Part shown: positions 1 to 59,500 of the stretch, in pieces
Numbering within the stretch: position 1 is the stretch's first letter
Layout: each line of letters begins with the position of its first letter
DNA from: Haliotis rufescens
Lineage: Eukaryota
Length of the DNA stretch: 64,000 nt
Direction: 5' to 3'
Assembly (NCBI RefSeq): GCF_023055435.1
Contig: NW_025964223.1
Location: 10,044,001-10,108,000, forward strand
Made by a program: the position numbers and the translations under genes
The notes under the pieces: generated by a model
What the model was told of the DNA's origin: nothing
Seen by the model: only the letters and a program-made list of their open reading frames with translations
Database searches by the model: none

Positions 1-685
1 ATGAAACGTATGTAAAAACCTGTCAACGAGGGACAGTAAAACAACTAGACTTATCACAGCAATAAATTTAAAACTAGTATGTAATCATAAAATCAATAGC
101 ACTTTACATATACATTACATTTTAAAAACAAGCTATAGATCGCCAGCAACTGAAGGTAGATCACCATACTAGGGACCAAGGGGACTTACAGTACCTTTGC
201 TACCTGCATGGACCCTAGCAGGATTTACATCATCCCTTCAGTCGCTGGCGATTGTACATAATTTTAGCCACAATTAAAATGACAGAAATTCTACGTTAAA
301 AAAGCGTAGTAAATGTAAATATTCCTTGAATGACAGGGACTTATGATACCCTCTCAGGGGGACAATAATTTTACAGTACTTTAACCCCCTTCGAGGATAC
401 TGCCACTAACAATCTCAGATATAAATTCATTCTACTAGTGTTAAAAAGTTATCATACACAAAACATATTAACAAAATTTATGATACAATTCAATTTCTTT
501 TAAAAAAACAATAATTAAATGATCCTTAATAGTTTTGACCTGGAAATATTTATCCCTTGTGATGGAAAAATCAACACAGTCAAGCAATATATGCTTGACG
601 GTGATTCTTTACTCACAAGGGATGCAGAACGGATGATCCTCCCCTTTCAACAAATATTCGTGGGTGTAACGGCAATGGCCAATAC
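1..685 (-). mobile_element. 3' fragment of I/Nimb-type LINE (C-terminal cysteine motif + structured 3' UTR), runs off the window edge
   Basis: Reverse strand reads IGHCRYTHEYLLKGEDHPFCIPC..RITVKHILLDC; 3' UTR aligns with 17520-18020. Confidence 0.9.
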
Positions 686-7200: not shown

Positions 7201-10200
7201 TGCCACGTTTCAAATGAAGAATGTTGCATTTGTCAAGTCCAAAGGACACGCCGATATCATTAGAAGAGGACTCGACAAGAAGAATCGGTTTTTTGAGTGT
7301 ACATCCTCCATTGACAATAAGTTCAAGGTCATCCACGTAAAGGAGGTGAGTAAAGGGGGTTGGGGATCTCTGCTTAGGAGGTCCCGGGTGATAACCTTCC
7401 TCTTTGCTGAGCAAAAAGCTTAAAAGATATATTATTATTATTATTATTAACAAAGGACTTGCAATAACTACACTGCCGTATCCTTATGTTATCAAATTAA
7501 CACGATTTCAAATCCAAGTCAATAAACCTACTACAGATAAGCAAAGACAACCGCAGGGACACTGACAATCAGCTGTCGAGTCTTCCAGTCCCTGATGAGA
7601 TAGGCCGTTAGAGCTGTGATCATGTTTCCCGCACTCCAGAAGAGGTTCATAGCAACACCTGCCCACATACGCTTAGAGGGACCGACTATCTCCATGCCTG
7701 TTCGTAACATAAATGGTTAGCGTTTATTGTCGGTTAAAGTACAACTACATGTAGTGTCGTCCGGACACTGGTGGCCTCATTAGTATCTGGTTTGCATCAT
7801 CTGAATTGACTTCTCTGATAAATTAAGCGAGTGAATGTCATTAACAGTCAACAACATTGACGTTTTATTATGGAGTTGGGGCTAAATCACACAATCAGGA
7901 TTTTTACTGCTGTTTTTGACAGGAACATTCCCGATTAAAATTTGTCAAAAGTCTGATCAAGATCCCGTGTTTCGTGGCGGAGAATTCACAAACAATCAGA
8001 TATTGTTCAGAAAGCGTCCCGATGCAGCCGATTCCAACCGAATTCGTCCCGGATCTCCCGTTCTAAATCCGCTTGGTAAAAAACGACCGAATCGGTCCCG
8101 ACAGCCTTCCGATTCTCCCGAATGCGATCCGACAGAGATCAGACAGTGACCGGGCAGTGAACCGACAAAGACGGTTCGCATTCGGCAACATCTGGACGCA
8201 ATTTGGACTCAATCGACAAGAAACGGCAATGAACAATTCATTCTCGTTCATCACGACAGCGTCCCGATCCACAGGACACCGTCCAGACAACACAGGACAT
8301 TCATACGATTTTGATCCGATACAGCAGAATCTGCCACGTCATAGCCCCGATTGTAGTGAGTGAGTGAGTGAGTTAATATTTAAAGTCACATCGGCAATAT
8401 TTCAGCCATATCAGCCCCGATTGTAAGCCGACAAGTTTCCCGAATGTTACGGGACGCAGAATACTGTCGGGAGTGCTTGGCCGACCTCTCTGGACCTTTC
8501 CCGATCCTTAGGACTCTGTTATGAACGTATTCCAGATCATTGAGGATAGTAATCCGGCTTTTTCACTTTTCGTGTCGTGGCGCAGTCTGATCTCAAACGG
8601 GAGCCATGATCGGCAATTTGTGAACATGACCTTCGTAAATTAATCTGGAAACAGCAAGCCATTGACCGAAATCATAAGCGAGGATCCATGCTATCGGAAC
8701 ACAATATCACAAGCCAAATCGCCGAGCATGGACACCAGATCCTCTGAAGACGGCTCTTACGAAAAGCATGGAATACCAGGCACATATTCGTCCCCGGACT
8801 GCCAGAGACTACTCTCTTAGGCCGATTATGTGCACACACGCACGCACGCACGCACGCACGCACACACACCCACACTCCTCCGGGGAATATAGAAAGAGTA
8901 CATTCAGCTGTTGGGCAAACAAAAAGAATTCTGATCTCGCACTTAAACGGACGATAAAGGTGATAGCCATATACAGTCCTTTGCCTTACCAAATACGAAG
9001 CACACGAGATATTGGCCAAGGCAGCAGGCGTTGATGGCGAAATCAAGGAAGAGGACCACAGGGGCTGAATTGGACCACACCAGACAGATGCTGAGCAATA
9101 CCATGATGAACATGTTGCAGATTATAACTGGCCTTCTTCCAAACCTGCAGAAAACACAAGATAATTTGACTCATTATTATTCATAACGGCTTACAGTCTC
9201 CAAAAGTATCATCAATGACACCCTGTAACTTCGAATTACGAAACGTTTGCTACAACAAATAACAAACCCATTATGATAAGTGGGCTCCGATAACTCTCTT
9301 TGGATAGTGATATGTTGCATATCGTTTGTTTCTTTATTTTAATTCTCTTTGGATAGTGATATGTTGCATATCGTTTGTTTGTTTGTTGTTTAAGGCGGCA
9401 CTCAGCAATATTCAAGCTACATTGTATATGACGGCGGTTTGTAAATAATCCCGTGAGTCGCCTCTTACGACAGGCATAGTCGCATTTTACGACAAGCATG
9501 GGTTGCTGAAGACCTTTTCCATCCCGGATCTTCACAGGTATGTTGCATGTCGAAAATTGATAATGGGTAAAGCCTATTTATGCTCTGTGGATGTATATAC
9601 CAAAGGTGAAATTATTTGGATATCGCCTTCTGGTCATCTTCCCGAGTCCAGTTTCCACCCTTGCCGAACTAGGCTGGAATTCCTGGGCTCGATCGTAGCG
9701 CCACCAGTGGCTATTACGAGTTATGTCCCTTCCCAGCCTCTCCCATGGACCAATCAGATTCCACTTCTCGTATCACTTGCATTCGCTTCAAACAAAATGG
9801 CTACGCCCAGTCAGGACGATCTGATCGATTATCAAAATCTTTATTGTGATAAAACGGGTCTTACATCGCGAAATACATCAAATCACGTGAGCACCTAAAC
9901 ATAAACACATTTGGAAAATATCTGTTGACAACGAGTTGACGATGCACATGCTTTGCAAATCCTGCAATCGACCGAAATCTGCTCGACAGTTTACGAACCG
10001 GATTTAGATTTCGCTGCGCGATTTTGAATGGACTATGCATGGACTCGTTAGTCCAGCCAAAATATAACTCTACAATGCCAGCCTAGTTCGGCAAGGGTGG
10101 AAACTAGACTTTTATAGTCATTTAACTCCCTTGCCTCGGGAAGATGCCCTCTGGTATATAATTTAATGTGCTCTCTTATTTCTCCAATCAACCAAGCATT

Positions 10201-16269: not shown

Positions 16270-18101
16270 TGGCTCCATCGTCTATGGTGGAGCCTGCAAA
16301 AGTAATTTACAAAAACTCGATACCATCCATCATCAAGGCCTGAGGCTTTGCCTTGGAGCTTTTAGAACGTCTCCCATTCACAGTCTCTATATAGAAGCAG
16401 ATGAGCCTTCTCTTAAACAACGCCGTTTAAAATTATGTTTACAATACATCACTAAATTATATTCTAATCAGTCCAATCCAGCTTTTGAATGCATATTCAA
16501 TCCTCTCTACGAAGATCTTTACAATAAGAAATCAACACTTACTCCACCACTCGGAATCAGAATAAAATCTGCAATATCAGCTTCTAATATTCAACTCCAA
16601 GATATAGCTCCTACTAAACTTTTCTCATCTCCTCCTTGGCAAATGGTAAAGCCAGAGGTAGATCTTACATTAACAAAACTAAAGAAATCAGACACTAACG
16701 AATTAATTTACCAACAGGAATACAGTCAATTAAGAAATAATTATGACACTTATAAATCTATCTTTACAGATGGATCCAAGGATGGTGGCGCAGTTGCTAG
16801 TGCCACCGTCATTGGATCCAGAACAATATCTTCACGTTTACCTGATAACAGTTCCATATTCACTGCAGAAGCAAACGCCATTTTACAGCACTTAAATATA
16901 TCAGTAATCAAGCTAAACATAAACAATTCATACTGTTTTTAGATTCTCTTTCATGCCTTCAGGCGATTAAAAATATGTCACCTAAACATCCACTTTTAAT
17001 CGAAATTCTCGAATTATTTAATGATCTTGCTACTGGCCAATATGACATCGTCTTTTGTTGGTTACCAAGCCATGTTGGTATCATTGGTAACACAATGGCC
17101 TATGCTGCTGCAAAAGCAGCACTCAACAAATCTGTGACACCACTTCTGATTCCATACACTGATTTTAAACCCATGATTCGATCTTACATCCGAGATCTTA
17201 TGCAACAGAAGTGGGACGCCCAAGTAGGTATAAATAAATTACATGAAATTAAACCAAATATCGGTTATACCTACTTGGGCTGTCAGTCCAGATTTCAAGA
17301 GGTCATTCTAAGACGATGTCGCATTGGCCATTCCCGATACACTCACGAGTATTTATTGCAAGGTGAGGATCCTCCGTTTTGCATCCCTTGTGATGAGAGA
17401 ATCACGGTCAAGCATGTCCTGCTTGACTGTATTGATTTTGCCATCACAAGGGATCAATATTTCAACGTTTCATCTATAAAGGATCTTTTTAACCTCAACT
17501 CTCATTTAATTCTTTGATTTTTAAAAGAAATTGAATTGATTAATAAATTTTGATGTATAAAGTTATATATTTTATCAATTGGTAGAATATGATTATGAAC
17601 TGAGATTGTTAGTGGTTGTACCCTTGATGGGGGTTGAAGTAGCGTAAAATTATTGTCCCCCTGAGAGGGTGCGTAAACCCACTTCATTCAAAGTAATTTA
17701 TATATACCAGGTTTTTAATCGTAGAATATTTGTTTGTTTTAATTTTGGCTAAACTTGTCCATAATCATCAGTAACCGAAGGGATGGTGTAAATCCTGCCG
17801 GGGTCAATGCAGGTAGCAAAGGTACTGTAAGTCCCCATGGTCCCCGGTATGGTGACCTACCTTTTGGTTGCTGGTGATATATAGCCCAATTTTACGTTGT
17901 ATTGTAATGTATTGTATTATATGAATTTGTAGTTTTATGATCACTCACTAGTTTTAAACTGACATCTGTGATAATCTAGTACTTTTACTGTCCTTTGTCG
18001 ACAGGTTTATATTCTCAATTGATGTATTGTTTAATTTGATATAATCACTATATGGCTGAAATATTGCCGATGTGACTTTAAATTTTAACTCACTCACTCA
18101 C
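16270..18101 (+). mobile_element. 5'-truncated I/Nimb-type LINE (RT C-term, RNase H, Cys motif, full 3' UTR, (CTCA)n tail)
   Basis: IFTDGSK, FTAE, WLPSHVGIIGN RNase H motifs; 13-bp TSD TCTGTATGTAACA at 16257-16269 and 18102-18114. Confidence 0.93.
17764..17878 (+). ncRNA. Candidate structured RNA domain in LINE 3' UTR (copies at 139-252 minus, 53187-53300 plus)
   Basis: 18-bp closing stem and 12-13-bp inner stem with compensatory substitutions among three copies. Confidence 0.65.
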
Positions 18102-19098
18102 TCTGTATGTAACAGCCCGTTGGCAAACATCCGGGACGCATTAACGAAAATTAAATTTGATGATCAGTTACCACTTCATGAGATTAATATAGCAATAAAT
18201 TTGCAAAACTTCGCACAGTAAATTACAAACGACACAGTTTGTATACCTATTTTCCATTTATACAGGCCCACGTACCTGCTGTCACAATCGTTTTACAACA
18301 AAACGCTTTCCATATTCTGCAGAGTCGATTGTACGATACCGACTAGGTCATGGGCATGTGTCTATGAACCTCTAACAAAGAATGATAGTACCAGGTGTTC
18401 GCGAAAAGGTGACCCACCGGTCACACCGGTCACAATGTTGTAACCTTTATCAAACAGCTTCTGAGCATGAGTCGTATGACGCTCTTTGAAATTTTGGAAG
18501 AATGAGCATGCTCGATAACGCCTTAAAAGCTTCAGGAATACTTCTCGACATAAAGGGCAAGTTGACTATTGGAAGGTTGAAGTCATCTCCGTTGTTATAT
18601 AGTAGTCTGTCACTCTGAATCCTTATGTTATAGATCTAAATACGAAACAAATTAGAGTCTCACTGGTCTCCTTTATTTCTAGTTCAGATGTGTAAATCAG
18701 TGGAATGGAAATAGCTCTTTGATGATTCTTGGAGAACTTCAAGCAATAATAACACGACACGAATTACATTATATATAATATATACATGTATATGTTGGTA
18801 ATCCACTCTACAATTCTTAGTGGGCACACAATATAGATCTTGGCCATCATCATCTTGCATTAATAGTTTTCATTGGTTAGGGCATTTATACTTGGAACAA
18901 AGTAATAACAACTCAATGAAGACAGGGATGTAAGCATATAGTTTTACAATATTTAGTTTTCTTTGCAAAATGATATTACTGCAGCATGTTATCTCATTCT
19001 AAACAGTTCAGAAAATTAGATACAGCCAACAAAAATATTCAATAACATTATATAATTATGTAGTTCATTTTCTTAAATAATTCTACTCAAGCTCTATG

Positions 19099-19263: not shown

Positions 19264-21559
19264 CTATGATATCTGCATACATGGCTTCTCTATTGGAATT
19301 TTATCATTTGCGGTCAGTGTCCAGATATTGTTCTTCAATTTGAATTTTAAAATGAATATTGTTGAATCATAACTTTGTGTGCTGCAAGAACGCTTTAGTA
19401 TTTTAAAGGTATCAATCATCCTTCTGTTGATGTATATGTTTGCAGGTAATGCACTCCACTAAAGACCTACTAAAGTGTACCGTGTAGTTAAAAGTGACAA
19501 GAACATTTTTTCCCTTATGAAAATAAATCTTCGCTAAAATTGAACGAAGCCGACGACATCATAAGCAAATATGTTTATAAATCACAATAAAACAGTGATG
19601 ATACCAGGTTTATAACAAAAGGAGAGCCTTCCTACCCCACCAGTGACACCCGTCACCGTTGACTAAAAGGACATTCATGCTGACAGGAACAGAAAGGAAC
19701 AAGTTTAATAATATACTCTGCAAAATAAAAGAAACGCAAAAGTGAGTTTAGATGTAAATTTCATATGAATTATCAACAGATGGAAATCGATTGTTCAAAC
19801 TTGGAAAACATCATTGTCATTAATCCAGGTTCCATATGGCACACAATTGGTCATCTGTTCTTGACATGTTTTCGCTGTTCACCTGCTGTACATGTAAGAT
19901 TGTGATATCAAATGTTCTATTGCGAACACATATACTGCCAGCGCTCATGATTGCCACATCTATTGCACGAATGAATGAACATATCATTAATAATCTTACC
20001 TGAGCTCACTGTGTGTTCTGAAGTCAAATCGCTGTAAGGCATCCTGCACGGCTTCGTTAACGTTTACCCTCAAAAGTACGATAGAAAAATCTGCGATTCT
20101 GTACCATGTGTGTTCAATGTTCGACTGTATTTTTTGCGACAGGTGTTCGTTTATTTATTAAAATTCCACACATTCATAAATCATATTGAGTTGCTCGCCT
20201 CTTCTCCAGTTGATCACACTCTCCACTGATGCTTACTGCTTTGATTAACTGGAGGCCGGATATAACTAGTTACAAACTCTGTTCTAATTATGCTAATTGA
20301 GAAAGCGCATTATACTAGATGACAAACTTAGTTATCCTGTCGCACTAATCCTTGTTTGTATATATTAAATTGTATATATTCATATTTGCCGCTATTAATG
20401 ATAAAATTTATTTTACCGTCATTGTTTAAAACCACTCTGAACTACTTGTATGTATAGATCATCTTAGGCGAACGTTACAAATCTTCTATTTCTTTATTAT
20501 GTAAAATGCTGTCAACATGAATAAATGCCAACTATTCCATAACACTCCAAATGTAGTTGTCATAATGAACATAGTTTTAAACTATAATTGTCACGTGCAA
20601 TAATACTGTCCGGTATTATTAATAATATTTTCAATATCAACCACATATTGTGTGAATCCAGTAAGAAGAAACTGAGTGAAGCAGTGGTAAAATCTATCCA
20701 TATATACAAAATTGTATATTTTTGGATATACCATTATACAAAATTGTATATTTTTCGATGTAACATACATACAAATTGTATATTTTGTATATATTGCAAT
20801 TTTCCCCTGTGAACGTTTATATAGCCCAACAAGTGATGATACACGTGCATGTCATGTTCGTGTGTTACGGTGCCAGGCTCTCACGTGGTTCTGTTTCTTG
20901 CGAATTCTTCATGTTTTCACCAAATCCCTGCAGTACATCATTCTTTCCACACAAATCAATCCCAATACATGTAGAAATGCATGCCGAAAGTCCTTTTTGG
21001 TATTAATTTCGTTTAACACTCAGCAACAATCTGGGAGATATTTACGATTTTACTACCTTTGCGAGGGGTTTTATTTGCAGATAATATGAAATATTATGCA
21101 AAGGAAATGTTATATTCTAAATTCTAAATTATTCAATGGAGTATTTCTGAAACGCATTCTGAAAATATTGGAAAATGTAAAATATGTGTTTATGAAATCC
21201 GACAAGGCGACCACCATACCCTCTCCATAGCAATTGACACAAACGACCTTTAGTCCCTATTCTCTGCACACGAGTGTACAGCGGGTGTCAGCACCATACC
21301 CGTGCTCGTGGGTAAACGTGTAAGACCTGCATCACTTCGGGCTTTCCTCCAACATTAAGCTGACACGCCGTGATATGACTGGAATACTGTTAAAAGCGGC
21401 GTTAAACCCAACTCACTCACTCACTCACTCACTCACTATTACCATCTATCACTTTTATTCATGCATTATTATTTTGCTTACCCTCGTTGTAATGTCACTA
21501 ATTGTTATGAATTGTAATGAAACTAATTTCCTTTATTTACACTAAAGGACCCAAGAATC

Positions 21560-50500: not shown

Positions 50501-53500
50501 GGAAATAAACGTAAAAGAAGGTCTGGTCTGCCCACCATGCAATTCCACAAGTATGTCATTTGCATACTGGTTTTTACATTAAATATACGAGACCGCGTCC
50601 GTGGTCTTGTGGTAGAGCGTCCGCCCGGAGAGCGGAAGGTCCAGGGTTCGATCCCGGGCCGCGTCATACAAAAAGACGTTAAAAGATTGTACTTGTTGTT
50701 ACCCTGTCTGGCGCTCGACATTAAGGGGCTAAAACAAGGACTGGTCGGCTCGGAGTCAGTATACTGTGTCTGAGTGGGGTATTCATGTTAAACTGCGGCA
50801 TGGTATCTCAGTTAGCTAGCACTATAAATCGGCATCAGTCCGGACTAGTACAAGCAGCCACACACACACATACACGTGCATGCACGTCGCTATATAAGTG
50901 CAATAATCTTGGACGCGACGTTAAACCCAATTTCACCTCACCTTTTAAATATACGAATTAACATATTGAAGTAAACTCTTACAAATATATATGTAGAAAT
51001 TATAACTGCACATACTGCTTATTTTGACATTTGCACAAATACACCGAAGACAATAACAAGAAACCGGGGACATGGTCAATCGCAATAAGGCAATAAAGAC
51101 TACATCCATTCTATCTTTATCAGGAAGCAGAAGTCCGTTGATGGACGAGGTCTAATTATTTTTCGGTGTATGGTATTATAAATGCCAAAACATTGCTTGG
51201 TTGGCCAATGAAATACCATAGCATTACTTGCAATTATGTATGAACACATTCATGTTGTAGGTAGGAACGATCTACTGGTCAAGATATGACGGCTAGTCAT
51301 GATTGGTTTGTGTAGTGGTTGAAACTAGACAGTGAAGAAAAAATAATAAAAATAGCGAATTGAGGTACAAAATGGGCCAGTAGGCCCGACTGCTTCTTGA
51401 AAATTTAGCTTTCCATCTTAATCACTGGAACGTCGAAAGATCGAAAGCACACCATCACTTTCGTATTTGAATTCTTGCAGATAACCTGGTTCATTACTTT
51501 GTTTAGGTGCAATGGATTATGTATGCACTGACTTCTTTCCAGATGGGTTTTGTCTGCGGGAAAAAGTCCTTCGTGAGTCATGCCAGAATGCTGGGTATGT
51601 TAGGGCATTTGGTTGGAGGCCTCATCAACGGACCACTGGCAGACATGTGAGTTCCTAGGATGGGGGGATCTTCGACGTTAGCGAGAGAGTGAATGTTGTT
51701 TGATACGATGGCTGCATTTTGACTGTTTTCGGAACATCCTGCTTTTCCGTTAGATAAAACGATGTAACCCCGTATTTTGCCTTTGTTATATCCCAAAATG
51801 CATGATTAAGAACTGAAAGAAAACTGTTTGGATTTTATACTGTAGATGTGCTAATTACATGATTGGGGTTACACGCGACTTTGAAAGGTAATAATTATTG
51901 TGTGCACGCTTTGTGTTTAATGGTACCCCTTGCTTGGACAATACTTAAACTATTTTAATACATTTAAGAGTAAATATAAGAATTATATCATTATGTAATA
52001 GATGACAATAAGAAAGCACATACTGGTGCTGTAAAATTAACCATTGAAGCAATGTTGTGTTGAATCATTTTCGACGTTTCTGTGCTTCTGGTAGGACACG
52101 ACATACATTATTGGCGAAAACCTGTTGTCATCTCTGATTTTCACTGACCCATTCCTATAAATTGTCACCTCTATTATGCTGTTTACACCAAATGGCATCT
52201 GTTTCATCGGATAATCGATGCTGGTTATTCTCTGGCGTTTTATATATGTAGAAACATTAGACTACCACACACGTCTGTAGGGTGGCACATGATCCTCAAA
52301 GAGAGTTGTTATGGCGACCACAGTCAAACTTCACTGTCGATACTTAGCAAGTGTTGAAATAAATTCAAAATACATTAAATGAAGTATTTATTAAATGGAA
52401 TAATAATTTGATTTCGCGCTAAGTTTTCCAGATGATTATCCCTACACACTCAAAATCAATAACTTCCTGTTGTCGCCAACTTTGTTGAGATGAAGCCGGC
52501 AATCAATGCAAATTGAAAAGTTAACATGAACTGACATGCTTATACAAAGAGGATCGTCAAAACCATCGTAATACCTTTTGACTGTTTACCTCTGTGTCAA
52601 AGACACAAGGGTTAATCCACAGTGATACTCGCTAATATATATCTGTTTGACTTTTTAACGCCGTATTCAGCAAGTCTGGACCTCACAAAACAGTGATTGA
52701 TATTGTCAGCAACGATTCGTGCCACCAGGGTAAGATGACAAGCACACAGCCGAGCCAAGCCTAAACCTAGTGCTCAGGGGTCACTGACTGCTATGTTTTG
52801 TTGAGGTATAGATGGCATGAACAAAGCCGTTAATACAAATATACCATTTTATGTGTCAGACCCTAAACCCGTGTGCCATACGTTGATTACTGACATATTT
52901 GTGACTGATGAAAGACAATGCAATAAAATGAAACATGATTGATGACTTGGTGCTTATATTAAATTTGTTTGCAACTGATGCTGACTACATGCTGAGTGGA
53001 AGCTATGCGGACACTAACTAGCTTGTCAACACCCGTCTCGGCAGAAACGCCCGACAGCGGTTACACTTCCTGAAGCGGTTGCCATGTGCTGTCAGGGTTA
53101 AACTCTTGATACCTGGCCCCCACTATGCGTAGTGTCCTCGTGGAATCACTTATCACTTTTGTACCTGTCACTTCTCTGTGTAAATAATCGCCAACAGCGG
53201 AAGGGATGATGTAAATCCGGCTGGGGTCCATGCAGGTAGCAAAAGTACTGTAAGTCCCCATGGACCCTAGAATGGTGATCTACCTTCAGCTGCTGGCGAT
53301 CTGTAGCCCTTTTTTATATTGTACTGTTTCCATTAGTGATATCTTTTTATGGTTGTATGCTAGTTTTACATATTAATCTGTGATTTTCTAGTAATTTTAC
53401 TGTCCATCGATGACAGGTTATATTTAGTTTAAATATATGTATTAGAAATGTATAATTTCTCGTCCTGATATGGCGGAAATATTGCCGATGTGACGTAAAG

Positions 53501-56500: not shown

Positions 56501-59500
56501 CGTAAAATCTTTGATTGGGATTGAAAGTCCATGAGAAAACACTCCTCCCTTCGTAAGGCAACAAAAACAATGTTCCGACATGACTGAAGTCCCAGTATAC
56601 TGACTTGTCACAACAACTTATCACACTTGATGACATTCATTTCAGAACACGCACAGCTGAGCAAATCACACACGAACCACTCACGGTTTCCGGGCCACAA
56701 CTGCCACATTACTGTGACACACTGACGACGAATTCTGTGAAATTTTGAAATTGACAGGTCAAATCCAATCCCTCCAAAATAGCCGTACGCCACGCAGTTC
56801 CATTTGTCAATCAGATGTGCTGTGCTTTTTCACGACTGTTTAGTGATATTTTTATGGTTGTATGATAGTTTTAAATATTAATCTGTGATATTCTGGTAAT
56901 TGTACTGTCAATCGATGACAGGTTTTTATTTAGTTTAGATATATGTATAAATAAGGTATTACTTCTCGTCACGATATGGCTGAAATATTGCCGATGTGAC
57001 GTAAAGCATAAACTCACTCACTCCATTTGTCAATGACGTTGCACCATCAGTCTCATTCCCAGTAAATCTACAGGTTAATGTTGAACCACATACTAGATCG
57101 GGGTTGTCATCTTAGCGCTTGCTTTGTGTAACTAGACAAAGTAACGGGTGTTGTAAACAAATCCATTGGCAGTAGCAGTGATGTAGGTCAAGTTTTGCCA
57201 CATCCCAGTTCCTTGAGTGAGTGAGTTGGGTTGAACGCCGTCTTTAACAGTATTCCAGTTATATCGCGGCGTGTCAGCTTAATGTTGGAGGAAAGCCCGA
57301 AGTGATGCAGGTCTCAGACGTTACCACTTTGGTGAAACCCACGAGCACGGGTATGGTGCTGACAATCCTAGAAACATAATCTGGGCGAACCGGGATTCGA
57401 ACCCACAATCATAGGTTTCTGGCGTGCACAAGGGACGCAACTCTGCTCAGCGAATCGAGGCGCCTTAGACAACTGTGCTACCCGTGCCCCCACTATTTTC
57501 TGGAACAACAGCTTCTCAGATCCACTAAATGCCACCTGTGTTTAGTCTGTTTCTGTTTTAACAATTCGTTAACATCTCAGTGGCTGTCAGCTGTATACGG
57601 CGTACTGGGAAAATCACGCATTACTTAAGATTTGACCCGTGAAGATTCCGGGGTAGAATAGGTCTTCAGCAACACATGCTTGCCGTAAAAGGCGACTATG
57701 CTTGTCGTAAAAGGCGACTAACGGGATCGGGTGGTCAGGCTCGCTGACTTGGTTGATGCATGTCATTGATCCCAATTGCGTGGATCGATGCTCATGATAC
57801 TAATCACTGGATTGTCTGGTCCAGACTCGATTATTTACAGACCGCCGTCATATAGCTGGAATATTGCTGAGTGCGGCGTTAAACAACAAACCAACCAACC
57901 AACCAACCAACTTAAGATTTACTGCCCTTCCCATGTTAAAGGTCATAGTCATCGGGATAACCTACAGACAGTACTATTGCAGACCATTCCCACAAAAATG
58001 GGCAACACTCTCTTCCTCCTGATACCTAACGGTGTGGTTAGTCGCCGTGTCATGAAGTGGCGATTGGTTTTATGATAGTTGTATCACACTGGGTACATCA
58101 CACTGGGTACATAATACACTACACAATCGAGGGTATGGGACATGTGTAACTAATAGCTGCGTATGTTACATTCTCCAAAGGTTAGTACATGAGTACTTAT
58201 ATATACAGATACTTGTCACAAAACTTTGAAGTCGGATGATATTATTCCAGAAGTCAGATGGTGTAACTATATTTGGCCTCCAATAACCCATGTTTGTCAC
58301 AATATGCGACTAAACGGATCGGGCTGATCAGTGCAGTGACTTAATGATTGCGTGTCATCGTGTCACGACTGTGTGGATCTTTGCAATAGTATTAACCACT
58401 AGATTGTCTGGTACAGATTCGATTATTTCAAGGCCGCTGTCATTTAGCTGGACCTTGTTGAGTTTGGCATTAAACAACAACGACTACAATGTGGTACTCT
58501 AAATGGGTATAATTGTAATCTACACAGTCCTGCGAGTGAAGTACTATATGTATGTTGGAACAGGCATGGAGATAGTCGGTCCCTCTAAGCGTATGTGGGC
58601 AGGGGTTGCCATGAACCTCTTCTGGAGTTTGGGGAACCTTGTGACAGCACTAACGGCCCATCTCTTCAGGGACTGGAAGACTCGACAGCTGATTGTCAGT
58701 ATCCCGACGGTTGTTTTTGCTTATGTATAGTAAGTATTGGACTCTGATGTACTTCATACGTATCACAAACATGAACATGTGCAAACTATGTATAGAAGGT
58801 TGCAGTGAAACATGTACAGTAGTATTGTTATTTTTAGTATCGCCTCATCGAAGTAATAATACGATGGAAAAAAGAGAATATTTATCTTTTGTAGTTAAAT
58901 TGTACATGACTTATATCGGAATAATAATAACTTGTCATGTTTAAAAAAACAGTGAAGGTTACTAAATTTTCGCATCTCAGTTGAAAGCGTCAGTGACTTA
59001 CCAACATATGATTGTTCAAGCAAAGAACCATTTCCAATACAGTATTCTTAAGTTACATTCATATTTTTTTATATCCAAAGAACAAGTAATTCCTGACATC
59101 ATGAACATGTGATATGGTCTATATTAACTTATTGATGTTTACAGGAAAGCTCTGTCCATTTAGTTATGATAACCGGGTTAATAATATTTGTTTTCATCAC
59201 AGTTTTATCCCAGAGTCTCCAAGATGGCTTCTGAAACATGGCAAAGGAGAAGAAGCTAAAAGAATAGTTGCAAATATTGCGAAGAAAAACAAAGTTCAAA
59301 TAGATCCACAAATACTTGGTGAGGTCGATATCGAAATGGAAGAGGTAAAACAAGAACCATTCTGGAATCTTTTGAAGTCTTCTGTGATGGTGCGTCGAAT
59401 GATCATCATCTGTTATAATTGGTACGAGTTTATTCCTAACATAATACATTCTCACCAAATTTAAAAACAATAGGAACAAACTAGTAATTCAGCCAGTAGA

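What the first reader, a model, noticed from the sequence alone, without database searches (positions are those of the whole stretch)
17764..17878. 114-nt multi-stem RNA domain with compensatory mutations in the LINE 3' UTR
SEEN in three diverged copies (139-252 minus, 17764-17878, 53187-53300), embedded in poorly conserved AT-rich UTR. Closing stems: ATCGCCAGCGACTGAAGG/CCTTCAGTTGCTGGCGAT, ATCATCAGTAACCGAAGG/CCTTTTGGTTGCTGGTGAT and ATCGCCAACAGCGGAAGG/CCTTCAGCTGCTGGCGAT, with G-C>A-U, U-A>C-G and A-U>G-C swaps. Inner stems: CTAGGG/CCCTAG, CCGGGG/CCCCGG and CTGGGG/CCCTAG (double compensatory change). Near-invariant loop/junction segments: GGATGRTGTAAATCC, GCAGGTAGCAAARGTACTGTAAGTCCCC, ATGGTGAYCTA. 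Two UGUAA-(A/G)U-CC segments resemble T-loop motifs, which in RNase P, T-boxes and the ribosomal L1 stalk interdigitate to bind tRNA-like elbows. INFERENCE: a selected tertiary-structured RNA (ORF2 loading site, stability element or catalytic RNA) that I cannot assign to a known class. The SINEs borrowing this LINE's tail lack it, so it is not required for TPRT priming.
Basis: partly seen in the sequence, partly recalled or inferred. Interest (0 to 1): 0.8.

Follow-up and report, generated by a model that had tools for sequence, protein, structure and literature searches.

The report
Conserved RNA hairpin in abalone LINE tail

Summary
Each lies about 210 nt after the ORF2 stop and about 200 nt before a terminal hairpin and an (ACTC)n tail. 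The genome holds about 4,800 copies.

The RNA folds as one unbranched rod of about 36-41 base pairs. Compensatory changes support helices P1, P2a, P2c and P3 and one apical pair:
- 92% of cells are paired, against 30-48% when partners are slid.
- 16 of 17 shared double changes keep a pair, against 33% in background column pairs.
- A structure-level null simulated on the tree was reached in 0 of 500 runs.
- G-U cells outnumber A-C cells 584 to 95, so the fold belongs to the sense RNA.

A home-made all-pairs G-test with a tree null gave no individually significant pair.

The loops are nearly invariant, even in a LINE family whose ORF2 end is only 63-67% identical. The nearest outside relatives (55% identical) have 200-nt UTRs with the same terminal hairpin but lack this domain.

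The best reading is a lineage-specific accessory cis-RNA that displays fixed loops to a conserved partner. That function is inferred, not shown.

The parts
17764..17878 (+). Flagged copy of the 114/115-nt rod domain. It is a slightly decayed member of its subfamily, about 97% identical to the nearest copies.
   Evidence: The covariance model scores it 129 bits.
139..252 (-). Second copy, from a different subfamily. It is identical to two other genomic copies.
   Evidence: 141 bits.
53187..53300 (+). Third copy, from a young subfamily: it differs by one base from a version that is identical in 29 of the 30 fetched loci. This LINE copy is 5'-truncated exactly at the base of the element.
17764..17781 (+). 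P1 5' strand (e1-18). It pairs with 17860-17878, which holds one bulged U in this subfamily.
   Evidence: MFE fold. Nine of 18 pairs show changes on both sides, for example e4:e111 with AU 50 and GC 40.
17860..17878 (+). P1 3' strand (e97-114).
17785..17787 (+). P2a 5' strand (e22-24, GRU). It pairs with 17855-17857 (e92-94, RYC).
Evidence: e23:e93 is GC in 55 sequences and AU in 34. e24:e92 is UA 53, UG 37 and CG 11.
17788..17793 (+). Invariant GUAAAU, the long strand of the asymmetric internal loop. The opposite strand is UG at 17853-17854.
   Evidence: Zero or one change on internal tree branches at e26-e30.
17794..17803 (+). P2b (CC) and P2c (GCYRGGG) 5' strands. They pair with 17842-17852.
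   Evidence: e36:e83 is UA 71 and CG 19. e37:e82 is GC 42, GU 35 and AU 20. e34:e85 is GU 84 and GC 16.
17804..17809 (+). P3 5' strand (e41-46). It pairs with 17836-17841.
   Evidence: e42:e77 is CG 91 and UA 11. e44:e75 is AU 89 and GC 13.
17810..17835 (+). Near-invariant 26-nt apical region, CAGGUAGCAAAGGUACUGUAAGUCCC. It probably forms GG/CC pairs plus a small hairpin (G53-U65, C54-G64, R56-Y63).
   Evidence: e56:e63 is AU 70, GU 11 and GC 18. In an unselected genome sample the counts are A-U 58, G-U 18, G-C 19 and A-C 3.
17745..17749 (+). GGCUA, a possible outer helix P0 with UAGCC at 17882-17886 that would enclose the domain.
   Evidence: Predicted in the whole-UTR fold. Invariant in all subfamilies, including the divergent family, so there is no covariation for or against it.
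17882..17886 (+). UAGCC, the 3' strand of the possible P0.
17600..17683 (+). Upstream UTR domain, a second conserved rod followed by a third GUAAR..CC motif.
   Evidence: 86% mean pairwise identity. The stem reads AUAUCCUC/GAGGGUAU in one subfamily and GUACCCUU/GAGGGUGC in another.
18045..18075 (+). Terminal hairpin TCAC..GTGA around UAUGGCUGAAAUAUUGCCGAU. It is the deeply conserved candidate site for recognition by the reverse transcriptase.
   Evidence: Homologous hairpins sit next to the tail in related LINEs from metagenome contigs. The genome holds 7,381 copies.
18088..18103 (+). (ACTC)n microsatellite tail, the 3' end of the LINE.
16975..17553 (+). 3' end of ORF2 (RNase H plus the Cys/His C-terminal domain). 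It is frameshifted in this copy, and the ancestral stop is at 17551-17553.
   Evidence: Pfam RNase_H PF00075, E = 6e-10 on intact copies.

Best explanation
The element is a cis-acting structural domain of the LINE's own sense transcript. It is an unbranched rod of about 114 nt and 36-41 base pairs: P1, P2a, P2b, P2c, P3 and a small apical hairpin. The helices act as a scaffold. They may change sequence as long as pairing is kept, and they hold three fixed unpaired segments in place: GUAAAU opposite UG, the apical CAGGUAGCAARG..GUAAGUCC, and the AU/UA bulges.

It is an accessory module gained within the abalone LINE lineage. It is not the core signal for priming, which is the separate terminal hairpin next to the (ACTC)n tail.

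The most likely mechanism is inferred, not shown. The fixed loops would be a docking site for a conserved trans-acting partner, more likely a host RNA-binding protein or RNP than the fast-evolving LINE proteins. That partner would improve the fate of the LINE RNA: export, stability, avoidance of premature 3' processing in the AT-rich UTR, or RNP assembly.
For: Shown:
- Stable sense-strand fold, z = -5.3 to -7.3. Divergent subfamilies and both whole-UTR folds give the same rod.
- On 105 distinct copies, 92.4% of cells are paired against 30-48% with slid partners. There are 231 cells with changes on both sides, against 22-35 slid and 72 +/- 11 shuffled, and 18 pairs carry such changes.
- 16 of 17 shared double-variant states are canonical, against 33% in background column pairs with the same phylogeny (p = 5e-7).
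- In a tree-simulated null for the MFE-derived helices, canonical cells are 91.2% against 78.4 +/- 2.5%, and canonical double changes are 244 against 60 +/- 25. Both were reached in 0 of 500 runs.
- Changes on internal branches, meaning in replicating lineages, end in a pair 73 times and not 23 times. On tips the counts are 86 and 160 (p = 6e-12).
- G-U cells number 584 and A-C cells 95, which marks the sense RNA.
- Unpaired columns change least in replicating lineages: 0.78 changes per column, against 1.79 in stems and 4.8 in flanks.
- The element is the most conserved UTR block.
- It is present, with an invariant core and the same spacing (210-224 nt from the stop, 199-209 nt to the tail), in a LINE family whose ORF2 end is only 63-67% identical. 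In that family the terminal hairpin has changed both stem and loop.
- It is kept by young subfamilies with many identical copies and open ORF2 ends.
- It is absent from the nearest outside relatives (55% aa identity), which keep a homologous terminal hairpin and tail in a UTR of about 200-210 nt.

Inferred: a partner binds the loops, and the partner is a host factor. The argument is that the loops stayed fixed while the LINE proteins and the terminal hairpin diverged.
Against: No binding partner or phenotype is known. A home-made all-pairs G-test with a tree-based null gave no individually significant pair: the best true pairs, e4:e111 and e44:e75, reached E of about 3-6. The compensations rest on rather few founding events of subfamilies.

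All sequences come from one genome. The tree was built from the same 124 columns.

Invariant loops could equally reflect an RNA tertiary fold or binding by a conserved surface of ORF1p or ORF2p.

The element's overall nucleotide identity (75-90%) is only similar to, or slightly above, that of the ORF2 coding end (72-88%).
Confidence: 0.5

Rival explanations
1. The domain is a loading or retention site for the LINE's own proteins (nascent ORF2p or ORF1p). It would capture them in cis near the stop codon and hand them to the terminal hairpin, giving the LINE RNA an edge over parasitic SINE RNAs.
For: It lies a fixed 210-224 nt after the ORF2 stop and about 200 nt before the terminal hairpin, in all families. 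It is found only with this LINE group. Structured 3' UTRs that bind the element's own protein are established for R2 and for stringent-type LINEs (PMC11194090 and PMC4176376, abstracts only).
Against: The loops are invariant between families whose ORF2 C-termini are only 63-67% identical and whose terminal hairpins have changed. A protein-specific site would be expected to co-evolve. Relatives at 55% identity do without the domain.
Confidence: 0.25
2. One reading: a tertiary-structured RNA with interdigitated T-loops that binds a tRNA-like elbow, or a catalytic or exonuclease-resistant RNA.
For: Two UGUAA(A/G)UCC segments fit the bare T-loop sequence pattern U-(G/U)-N-R-A. They lie on opposite strands of the rod. 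The loops are as invariant as in tertiary-folded RNAs.
Against: - The hairpin proposed to hold T-loop 1 has no compensatory change and 18, 9, 8 and 2 unpaired cells at its four pairs.
- Position 1 of each motif covaries as a Watson-Crick partner of a distal base.
- No Rfam family, ribozymes included, matches at E <= 10, and there is no tRNA-like hit.
- Only 1 of 105 copies starts at the base of the stem, so there is no sign of an RNA end defined there.
- The first look at the reads shows no discrete RNA.
Confidence: 0.05
3. The hairpin is a source of, or target for, small RNAs: a miRNA-like or piRNA precursor, or a decoy in silencing.
For: A small-RNA run of a related abalone label lays reads on the element. 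Sixteen sense reads share a 5' end at e57, and ten antisense reads begin at one place over e1-29.
Against: Only 106 reads in about 18 million lay on the whole 851-nt stretch, and one sister run gave 2. Most reads are antisense and spread over the UTR, as expected for piRNA-like targeting of any LINE. No 5p/3p duplex is seen. Selection on loops and on long-range helices is not what a precursor needs.
Confidence: 0.05
4. There is no function of its own. It would be a captured GC-rich inverted repeat carried along by successful LINE masters, with apparent conservation due to the young age of the copies.
For: Many copies are young and near-identical. Single pairs do not reach significance in the all-pairs tree-corrected test.
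Against: Linkers on both sides diverged to 54-62% identity while the domain stayed at 89%. Double changes preserve pairing in 16 of 17 cases, against a 33% background. Internal-branch changes preserve pairing and tip changes destroy it. The domain survives in a family with 63-67% aa identity.
Confidence: 0.1

Closest known systems
3'-terminal stem-loops of stringent-type LINEs recognised by their reverse transcriptase (eel UnaL2, zebrafish ZfL2; PMC4176376)
   Same: Both are conserved sense-strand RNA structures in a LINE 3' UTR. In both, the stem sequence is free and the loop sequence is fixed.
   Different: Those hairpins are short, abut the tail repeats and are shared with partner SINEs. 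In this LINE a separate terminal hairpin fills that role. The 114-nt rod lies about 200 nt upstream of it and is missing from related LINEs.
R2 3' UTR protein-binding structure (PMC11194090)
   Same: Both are multi-helix 3' UTR RNAs of a non-LTR element maintained by compensatory change. Binding and priming determinants are separable in R2, as they would be here.
   Different: R2's structure is branched with a pseudoknot, spans most of the UTR and is required for TPRT. There is no sequence or model similarity, and binding was not tested here.
Constitutive transport element (CTE) of simple retroviruses (from my own knowledge, not tested)
   Same: Both are extended unbranched hairpins in the 3' part of an unspliced retroelement RNA. 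Both carry a repeated loop motif on opposite strands, here GUAAAU on the 5' strand and GUAAGU on the 3' strand. The CTE is a docking site for a conserved host factor.
   Different: There is no sequence similarity. The two loops here are not true mirror copies. Binding of the export factor NXF1 is untested. This is an analogy for how it might work, not a claim of membership.
T-loop motif (tRNA, RNase P, T-box)
   Same: The pentamer UGUAA fits the loose sequence pattern.
   Different: The U at position 1 behaves as a Watson-Crick partner of a distal base, and the proposed closing hairpin lacks support.

Membership tests
Terminal RT-recognition stem-loop of stringent LINEs | Lies directly upstream of the 3' tail repeats | tested here: not met
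   The element ends 199-209 nt before the (ACTC)n tail. A different hairpin occupies the terminal position.
Terminal RT-recognition stem-loop of stringent LINEs | Shared with the partner SINEs | tested here: inconclusive
   The (ACTC)n SINE in the window lacks the domain, but it also has a different terminal hairpin, so its partner LINE is unknown. The terminal hairpin has 7,381 genomic matches against 4,793 for the core, which is explained by 5' truncation.
Terminal RT-recognition stem-loop of stringent LINEs | Conserved across related LINEs of the clade | tested here: not met
   Relatives at 55% aa identity keep the terminal hairpin but give no covariance-model hit and have UTRs of about 200 nt.
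T-loop motif | Pentamer U-(G/U)-N-R-A | tested here: met
   UGUAA occurs at e24-28 and e63-67.
T-loop motif | Position-1 U is reserved for the intraloop pair with A5, and a local stem closes the loop | tested here: not met
   e24 covaries with e92 (UA, UG, CG) and e63 covaries with e56 (AU, GU, GC). The GGAU/AUCC stem has no compensatory change and only disruptive variants.
T-loop motif | Three-dimensional geometry with an intercalation gap | not testable with these tools
   This needs a solved structure or chemical probing.
Any Rfam family (ribozymes, xrRNA, tRNA-like and others) | Covariance-model match | tested here: not met
   cmscan at E <= 10 over 17000-18400 gave no match overlapping the element. 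ARAGORN found nothing.
Exonuclease-resistant or 5'-end-defining RNA | RNA, and the copies made from it, start at the base of the structure | tested here: not met
   1 of 105 copies starts within -5 to +10 nt of e1, and truncation points are spread evenly. No read pile-up at e1. This is an indirect test only.
miRNA-like precursor hairpin | Discrete, abundant 5p/3p small RNAs from the arms | tested here: inconclusive
   106 reads in about 18 million lay on the stretch, most of them antisense, and one sense 5' end at e57 has 16 reads. The runs carry another species label, and only two small-RNA runs were laid.
Selected RNA secondary structure (general) | Compensatory changes beyond what phylogeny alone gives | tested here: met
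   Met at the level of the whole structure. Not met pair by pair in a home-made R-scape-like test.

The most novel reading that the evidence does not exclude
The rod is a new class of retroelement RNA module that recruits a conserved host machine through three 5'-splice-site-like or PUF-like GUAAR(U)CC motifs spread over the UTR. The host partner could be U1 snRNP, recruited to suppress premature cleavage in the AT-rich UTR, or an export or PUF-type factor. In this reading the module was acquired once by an abalone LINE lineage and is the reason for that lineage's success, making it a CTE-like invention in a LINE.
Probability: 0.12. Interest if true: 0.75.

Novelty: new variant of a known kind. 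Interest (0 to 1): 0.45.

Why it matters
Structured 3' UTR RNAs that LINE enzymes recognise are known. Almost all are the terminal hairpin that SINEs copy.

Here an active, high-copy LINE group carries a second, larger and better conserved RNA domain. It sits well away from the priming site. Its loops have stayed fixed while the element's proteins and priming hairpin diverged, and its nearest relatives lack it.

That points to a step in LINE RNA life other than priming: export, stability, 3'-end control or RNP assembly. Such a step can be studied with a defined 114-nt RNA, and natural stem-compensated variants are ready to serve as controls. The result also gives annotators a clean covariance model for about 4,800 loci in abalone genomes.

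Tried and rejected
- **Rfam:** cmscan at E <= 10 gave no hit on the element. ARAGORN found nothing.
- **Literature:** a text search for three core strings returned only a chance primer match. The mollusc SINE-domain paper PMC4758252 does not contain the motifs.
- **All-pairs G-test with APC and a tree-based null (home-made, R-scape-like):** the top scores mix true pairs with subfamily-linked non-pairs, such as e41:e56, and no pair reached E < 1. I moved to structure-level and Watson-Crick-aware tests.
- **Local alternatives for the first UGUAA:** Both lose to the long-range P2a, because C24 pairs with G92 but not with A29.
- **Relatives outside the genome:** the protein-guided metagenome scan gave 80 LINE loci and no covariance-model hit. 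The core pattern was absent from viral and prokaryotic contig collections.
- **xrRNA-like end definition:** no pile-up of truncations at e1.
- **Earlier scan note on a histone promoter core in LINE tails:** I fetched that place. It is an unrelated hairpin of another LINE.
- **Dimerisation through the palindromic GUAC in the apical loop:** rejected, because the palindrome is lost in several subfamilies (GUAU, GUAA).
- **Contig depth as evidence for SINE sharing:** rejected as unreliable. Depth follows conservation at 90% likeness.
Full report
**Observation**

They carry exactly the stems and invariant segments quoted.

Each copy folds on the given strand to -52 to -57 kcal/mol, with z-scores of -5.3 to -7.3 against dinucleotide shuffles. 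The opposite strand of copy 2 scores z = -0.4. No Rfam family matches the element even at E <= 10, and ARAGORN finds nothing tRNA-like.

**Context**

Upstream of copy 2 lies the end of a LINE ORF2. On intact copies elsewhere in the genome this ORF is open for 388-390 residues and contains an RNase H domain (Pfam PF00075, E = 6e-10) followed by a Cys/His C-terminal region. I did not test that.

The ancestral stop is at 17551-17553, so the element starts 210 nt into the 3' UTR. The UTR continues for about 200 nt and ends in a terminal hairpin (18045-18075) and an (ACTC)n tail (18088-18103).

BLAST with each window copy finds thousands of candidates, including sets of 99-100% identical copies. 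The 22-nt core pattern matches 4,793 places against 25 for the reversed control. The element therefore belongs to an abundant LINE group that was active recently.

Aligning whole UTRs of seven subfamilies shows the following:

| Block | Mean pairwise identity | GC |
|---|---|---|
| 114-nt element | 89% | 54% |
| Upstream domain | 86% | 45% |
| End of ORF2 | 76% | 27% |
| Linkers | 54-62% | 17-29% |

The 'island' description is right, but it is not the only island.

**Structure**

I use e-numbers, meaning positions in the 114-nt copies. I collected 112 distinct, full-length copies. They came from 90 loci with flanks, plus 125-nt stretches chosen from an unselected list of core matches on two contigs.

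All single-sequence folds, including divergent subfamilies and two whole-UTR folds, give the same unbranched rod:

- P1: e1-18 with e97-114
- P2a: e22-24 with e92-94
- P2b: e31-32 with e88-89
- P2c: e34-40 with e79-85
- P3: e41-46 with e73-78
- a 26-nt apical region

On alignment A3 (105 sequences), the count of structure pairs gives these values:

| Measure | Observed | Partners slid | Shuffled |
|---|---|---|---|
| Cells forming a standard pair | 92.4% | 30-48% | 88.8% |
| Cells changed on both sides | 231 | 22-35 | 72 +/- 11 |

Eighteen pairs carry changes on both sides. Examples:

- e4:e111 is AU in 50 sequences and GC in 40.
- e23:e93 is GC in 55 and AU in 34.
- e24:e92 is UA 53, UG 37 and CG 11.
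- e36:e83 is UA 71 and CG 19.
- e37:e82 is GC 42, GU 35 and AU 20.
- e42:e77 is CG 91 and UA 11.
- e44:e75 is AU 89 and GC 13.
- e56:e63 is AU 70, GU 11 and GC 18.

**Phylogenetic correction**

1. An all-pairs G-test with APC, with a null made by re-placing each column's parsimony changes on a FastTree tree. No pair was individually significant. The best true pairs had E of about 3-6, and subfamily-linked non-pairs such as e41:e56 scored as high. Single-pair significance of the R-scape type is therefore not reached in this sample. The implementation is my own.
2. The same null applied to the structure as a whole, using only helices that MFE folding had already predicted. Canonical cells are 91.2% against 78.4 +/- 2.5%. 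Cells with canonical double changes are 244 against 60 +/- 25. Both values were reached in 0 of 500 simulations. The number of pairs with such changes is 18 against 13.9, reached in 33 of 500.
3. Among pair states in which both columns differ from the majority and that are shared by at least three distinct copies, 16 of 17 are canonical. For other column pairs with a canonical majority, which share the same phylogeny, the figure is 33% (p = 5e-7).
4. On the tree, changes on branches with three or more descendants are changes fixed in replicating lineages. These end in a pair 73 times and not 23 times. On tips, which mostly reflect decay after insertion, the counts are 86 and 160 (odds ratio 5.9, p = 6e-12).

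G-U cells outnumber A-C cells 584 to 95, which assigns the structure to the sense RNA. I conclude that the secondary structure is real and selected. The caveat is that the compensations trace to a limited number of subfamily founders within one genome.

**What the structure is not**

Its four pairs show no compensatory change and 18, 9, 8 and 2 unpaired cells.

The shared variants U18, A19 and U20 are either accommodated or unpaired in the rod model. The U24-to-C change found in one family pairs with G92 but not with A29, which also rules out a local GAU-GUAA-AUC hairpin.

In both UGUAA motifs the first U covaries as a Watson-Crick partner of a distant base. That does not fit a T-loop's internal U-A pair. 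The domain is a stack of helices, not a multi-branch fold.

**The loops**

Unpaired columns are the slowest to change in replicating lineages: 0.78 internal changes per column, against 1.79 in stems and 4.8 in the ten flanking columns. There are no internal changes at all at e26-29, e48-50, e52, e55, e57, e59-61, e66-72 and e90-91.

The motif GUAAR(U)CC follows a helix end three times in the UTR: at e25-32, at e64-71 and after the stem of the upstream domain. The first two lie on opposite strands of the rod.

**Distribution**

A divergent LINE family (locus L239) has an ORF2 end only 63-67% identical in protein to the main subfamilies (72-74% in nucleotides). It carries the element at 75-80% identity, with the same invariant core and the same spacing. 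Its terminal hairpin has changed in both stem and loop.

Across families the element lies 210-224 nt from the stop and 199-209 nt from the tail.

By contrast, the nearest relatives I could reach outside the genome are metagenome contigs with 52-55% identity over the last 390 residues. They have UTRs of about 200-210 nt that end in a clearly homologous terminal hairpin, a GTTAAA-like spacer and an (ACTC)n or similar tail. They give no covariance-model hit. The domain is therefore an accessory gained within this LINE lineage, while the terminal hairpin is the deeply conserved element.

Near-identical UTR words occur in public runs under four organism labels. Contigs from two of them cover the element.

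**RNA data**

One small-RNA run laid 106 reads of about 18 million on the 851-nt stretch, and a sister run laid 2. Most reads are antisense to the LINE and spread over the UTR. This assumes that small-RNA reads carry the RNA's own sequence, which rests on my own knowledge. The only sense start of note is at e57, with 16 reads.

This looks like low-level piRNA-like targeting, not a discrete product of the hairpin. Contig depth only mirrors conservation and says nothing on expression.

Of 105 copies with flanks, one (window copy 3) begins at the base of the stem, and the other truncation points are spread evenly. There is no sign that the structure defines an RNA 5' end.

**Mechanism**

Shown: a selected sense-strand rod with fixed loops, specific to this lineage, separate from the terminal hairpin and kept by active subfamilies.

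Inferred: the helices are a scaffold, and the loops are a recognition surface for a trans-acting partner. The loops stayed fixed while the LINE's proteins and its priming hairpin diverged, so I favour a conserved host protein or RNP that improves the fate of the LINE RNA. A site for the element's own proteins is the main rival.

Which partner binds is open. GUAAGU resembles a 5' splice site and UGUAAAU resembles a PUF site. Both resemblances come from memory and are untested.

**Limits**

- No eukaryotic genomes other than this one could be searched.

Noticed in passing
window 17600-17683 (+); the same block in L002, L032 and L240: A second conserved structured domain in the UTR (86% identity). 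It is a rod with the stem AUAUCCUC/GAGGGUAU in one subfamily and GUACCCUU/GAGGGUGC in another, which includes compensated positions. It also has a GGGGG/CCCCC helix and a conserved 23-nt loop, and is followed by a third GUAAR..CC motif.
   Followed up: partly
window 17745-17749 and 17882-17886 (+): GGCUA and UAGCC flank the element at fixed distances (12 nt and 3 nt). They are invariant in all families, including the divergent one. They could form an outer helix P0 that extends the domain to about 140 nt, but there is no covariation to test this.
   Followed up: partly
L119-L145 (metagenome contigs), 3' ends: Related RNase H LINEs from unknown organisms share one 3' architecture: a hairpin around UAUGG(G/C)UGAAA(U/G)AUUCC, then GTTAAAC-like letters, then a microsatellite tail that differs by lineage (ACTC, ATTC, CAAA, ACT or poly-A).
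   Followed up: partly
window 8343-8424 (-): An extreme 5'-truncated copy of the LINE. Only the last 58 nt or so (terminal hairpin plus tail) are present, flanked by a perfect 12-bp target-site duplication, ACAATCGGGGCT.
   Followed up: yes
window 21280-21438 (+); the same element is inserted in L061: An (ACTC)n-tailed SINE whose terminal hairpin (CGCCGUGAUAUGACUGGAAUACUGUUAAAAGCGGCG) differs from this LINE's. Its partner may be another LINE family that uses the same tail repeat.
   Followed up: partly
window 56850-57015 (+): A LINE copy truncated just downstream of the element, with the target-site duplication CCATTTGTCAAT.
   Followed up: yes
element e20-28 and e44-67 (window 17783-17791 and 17807-17830): Both UGUAA motifs supply an in-frame UAA to a short AUG-started reading frame: AUG-RUG-UAA and AUG CAG GUA GCA RAR GUA YYG UAA. 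This is probably a coincidence of the motifs.
   Followed up: no
L032:1150-2000, runs X20 and X21: Small RNAs of a related abalone label map mostly antisense to the LINE 3' UTR, including both conserved domains. This pattern is piRNA-like.
   Followed up: partly
L241 (G000:C445:49364421-49364449): I fetched the hairpin flagged in an earlier scan note as a histone-promoter core in a LINE tail (GCGCGGAC..GUCCGCGC). It is unrelated to the element studied here.
   Followed up: yes
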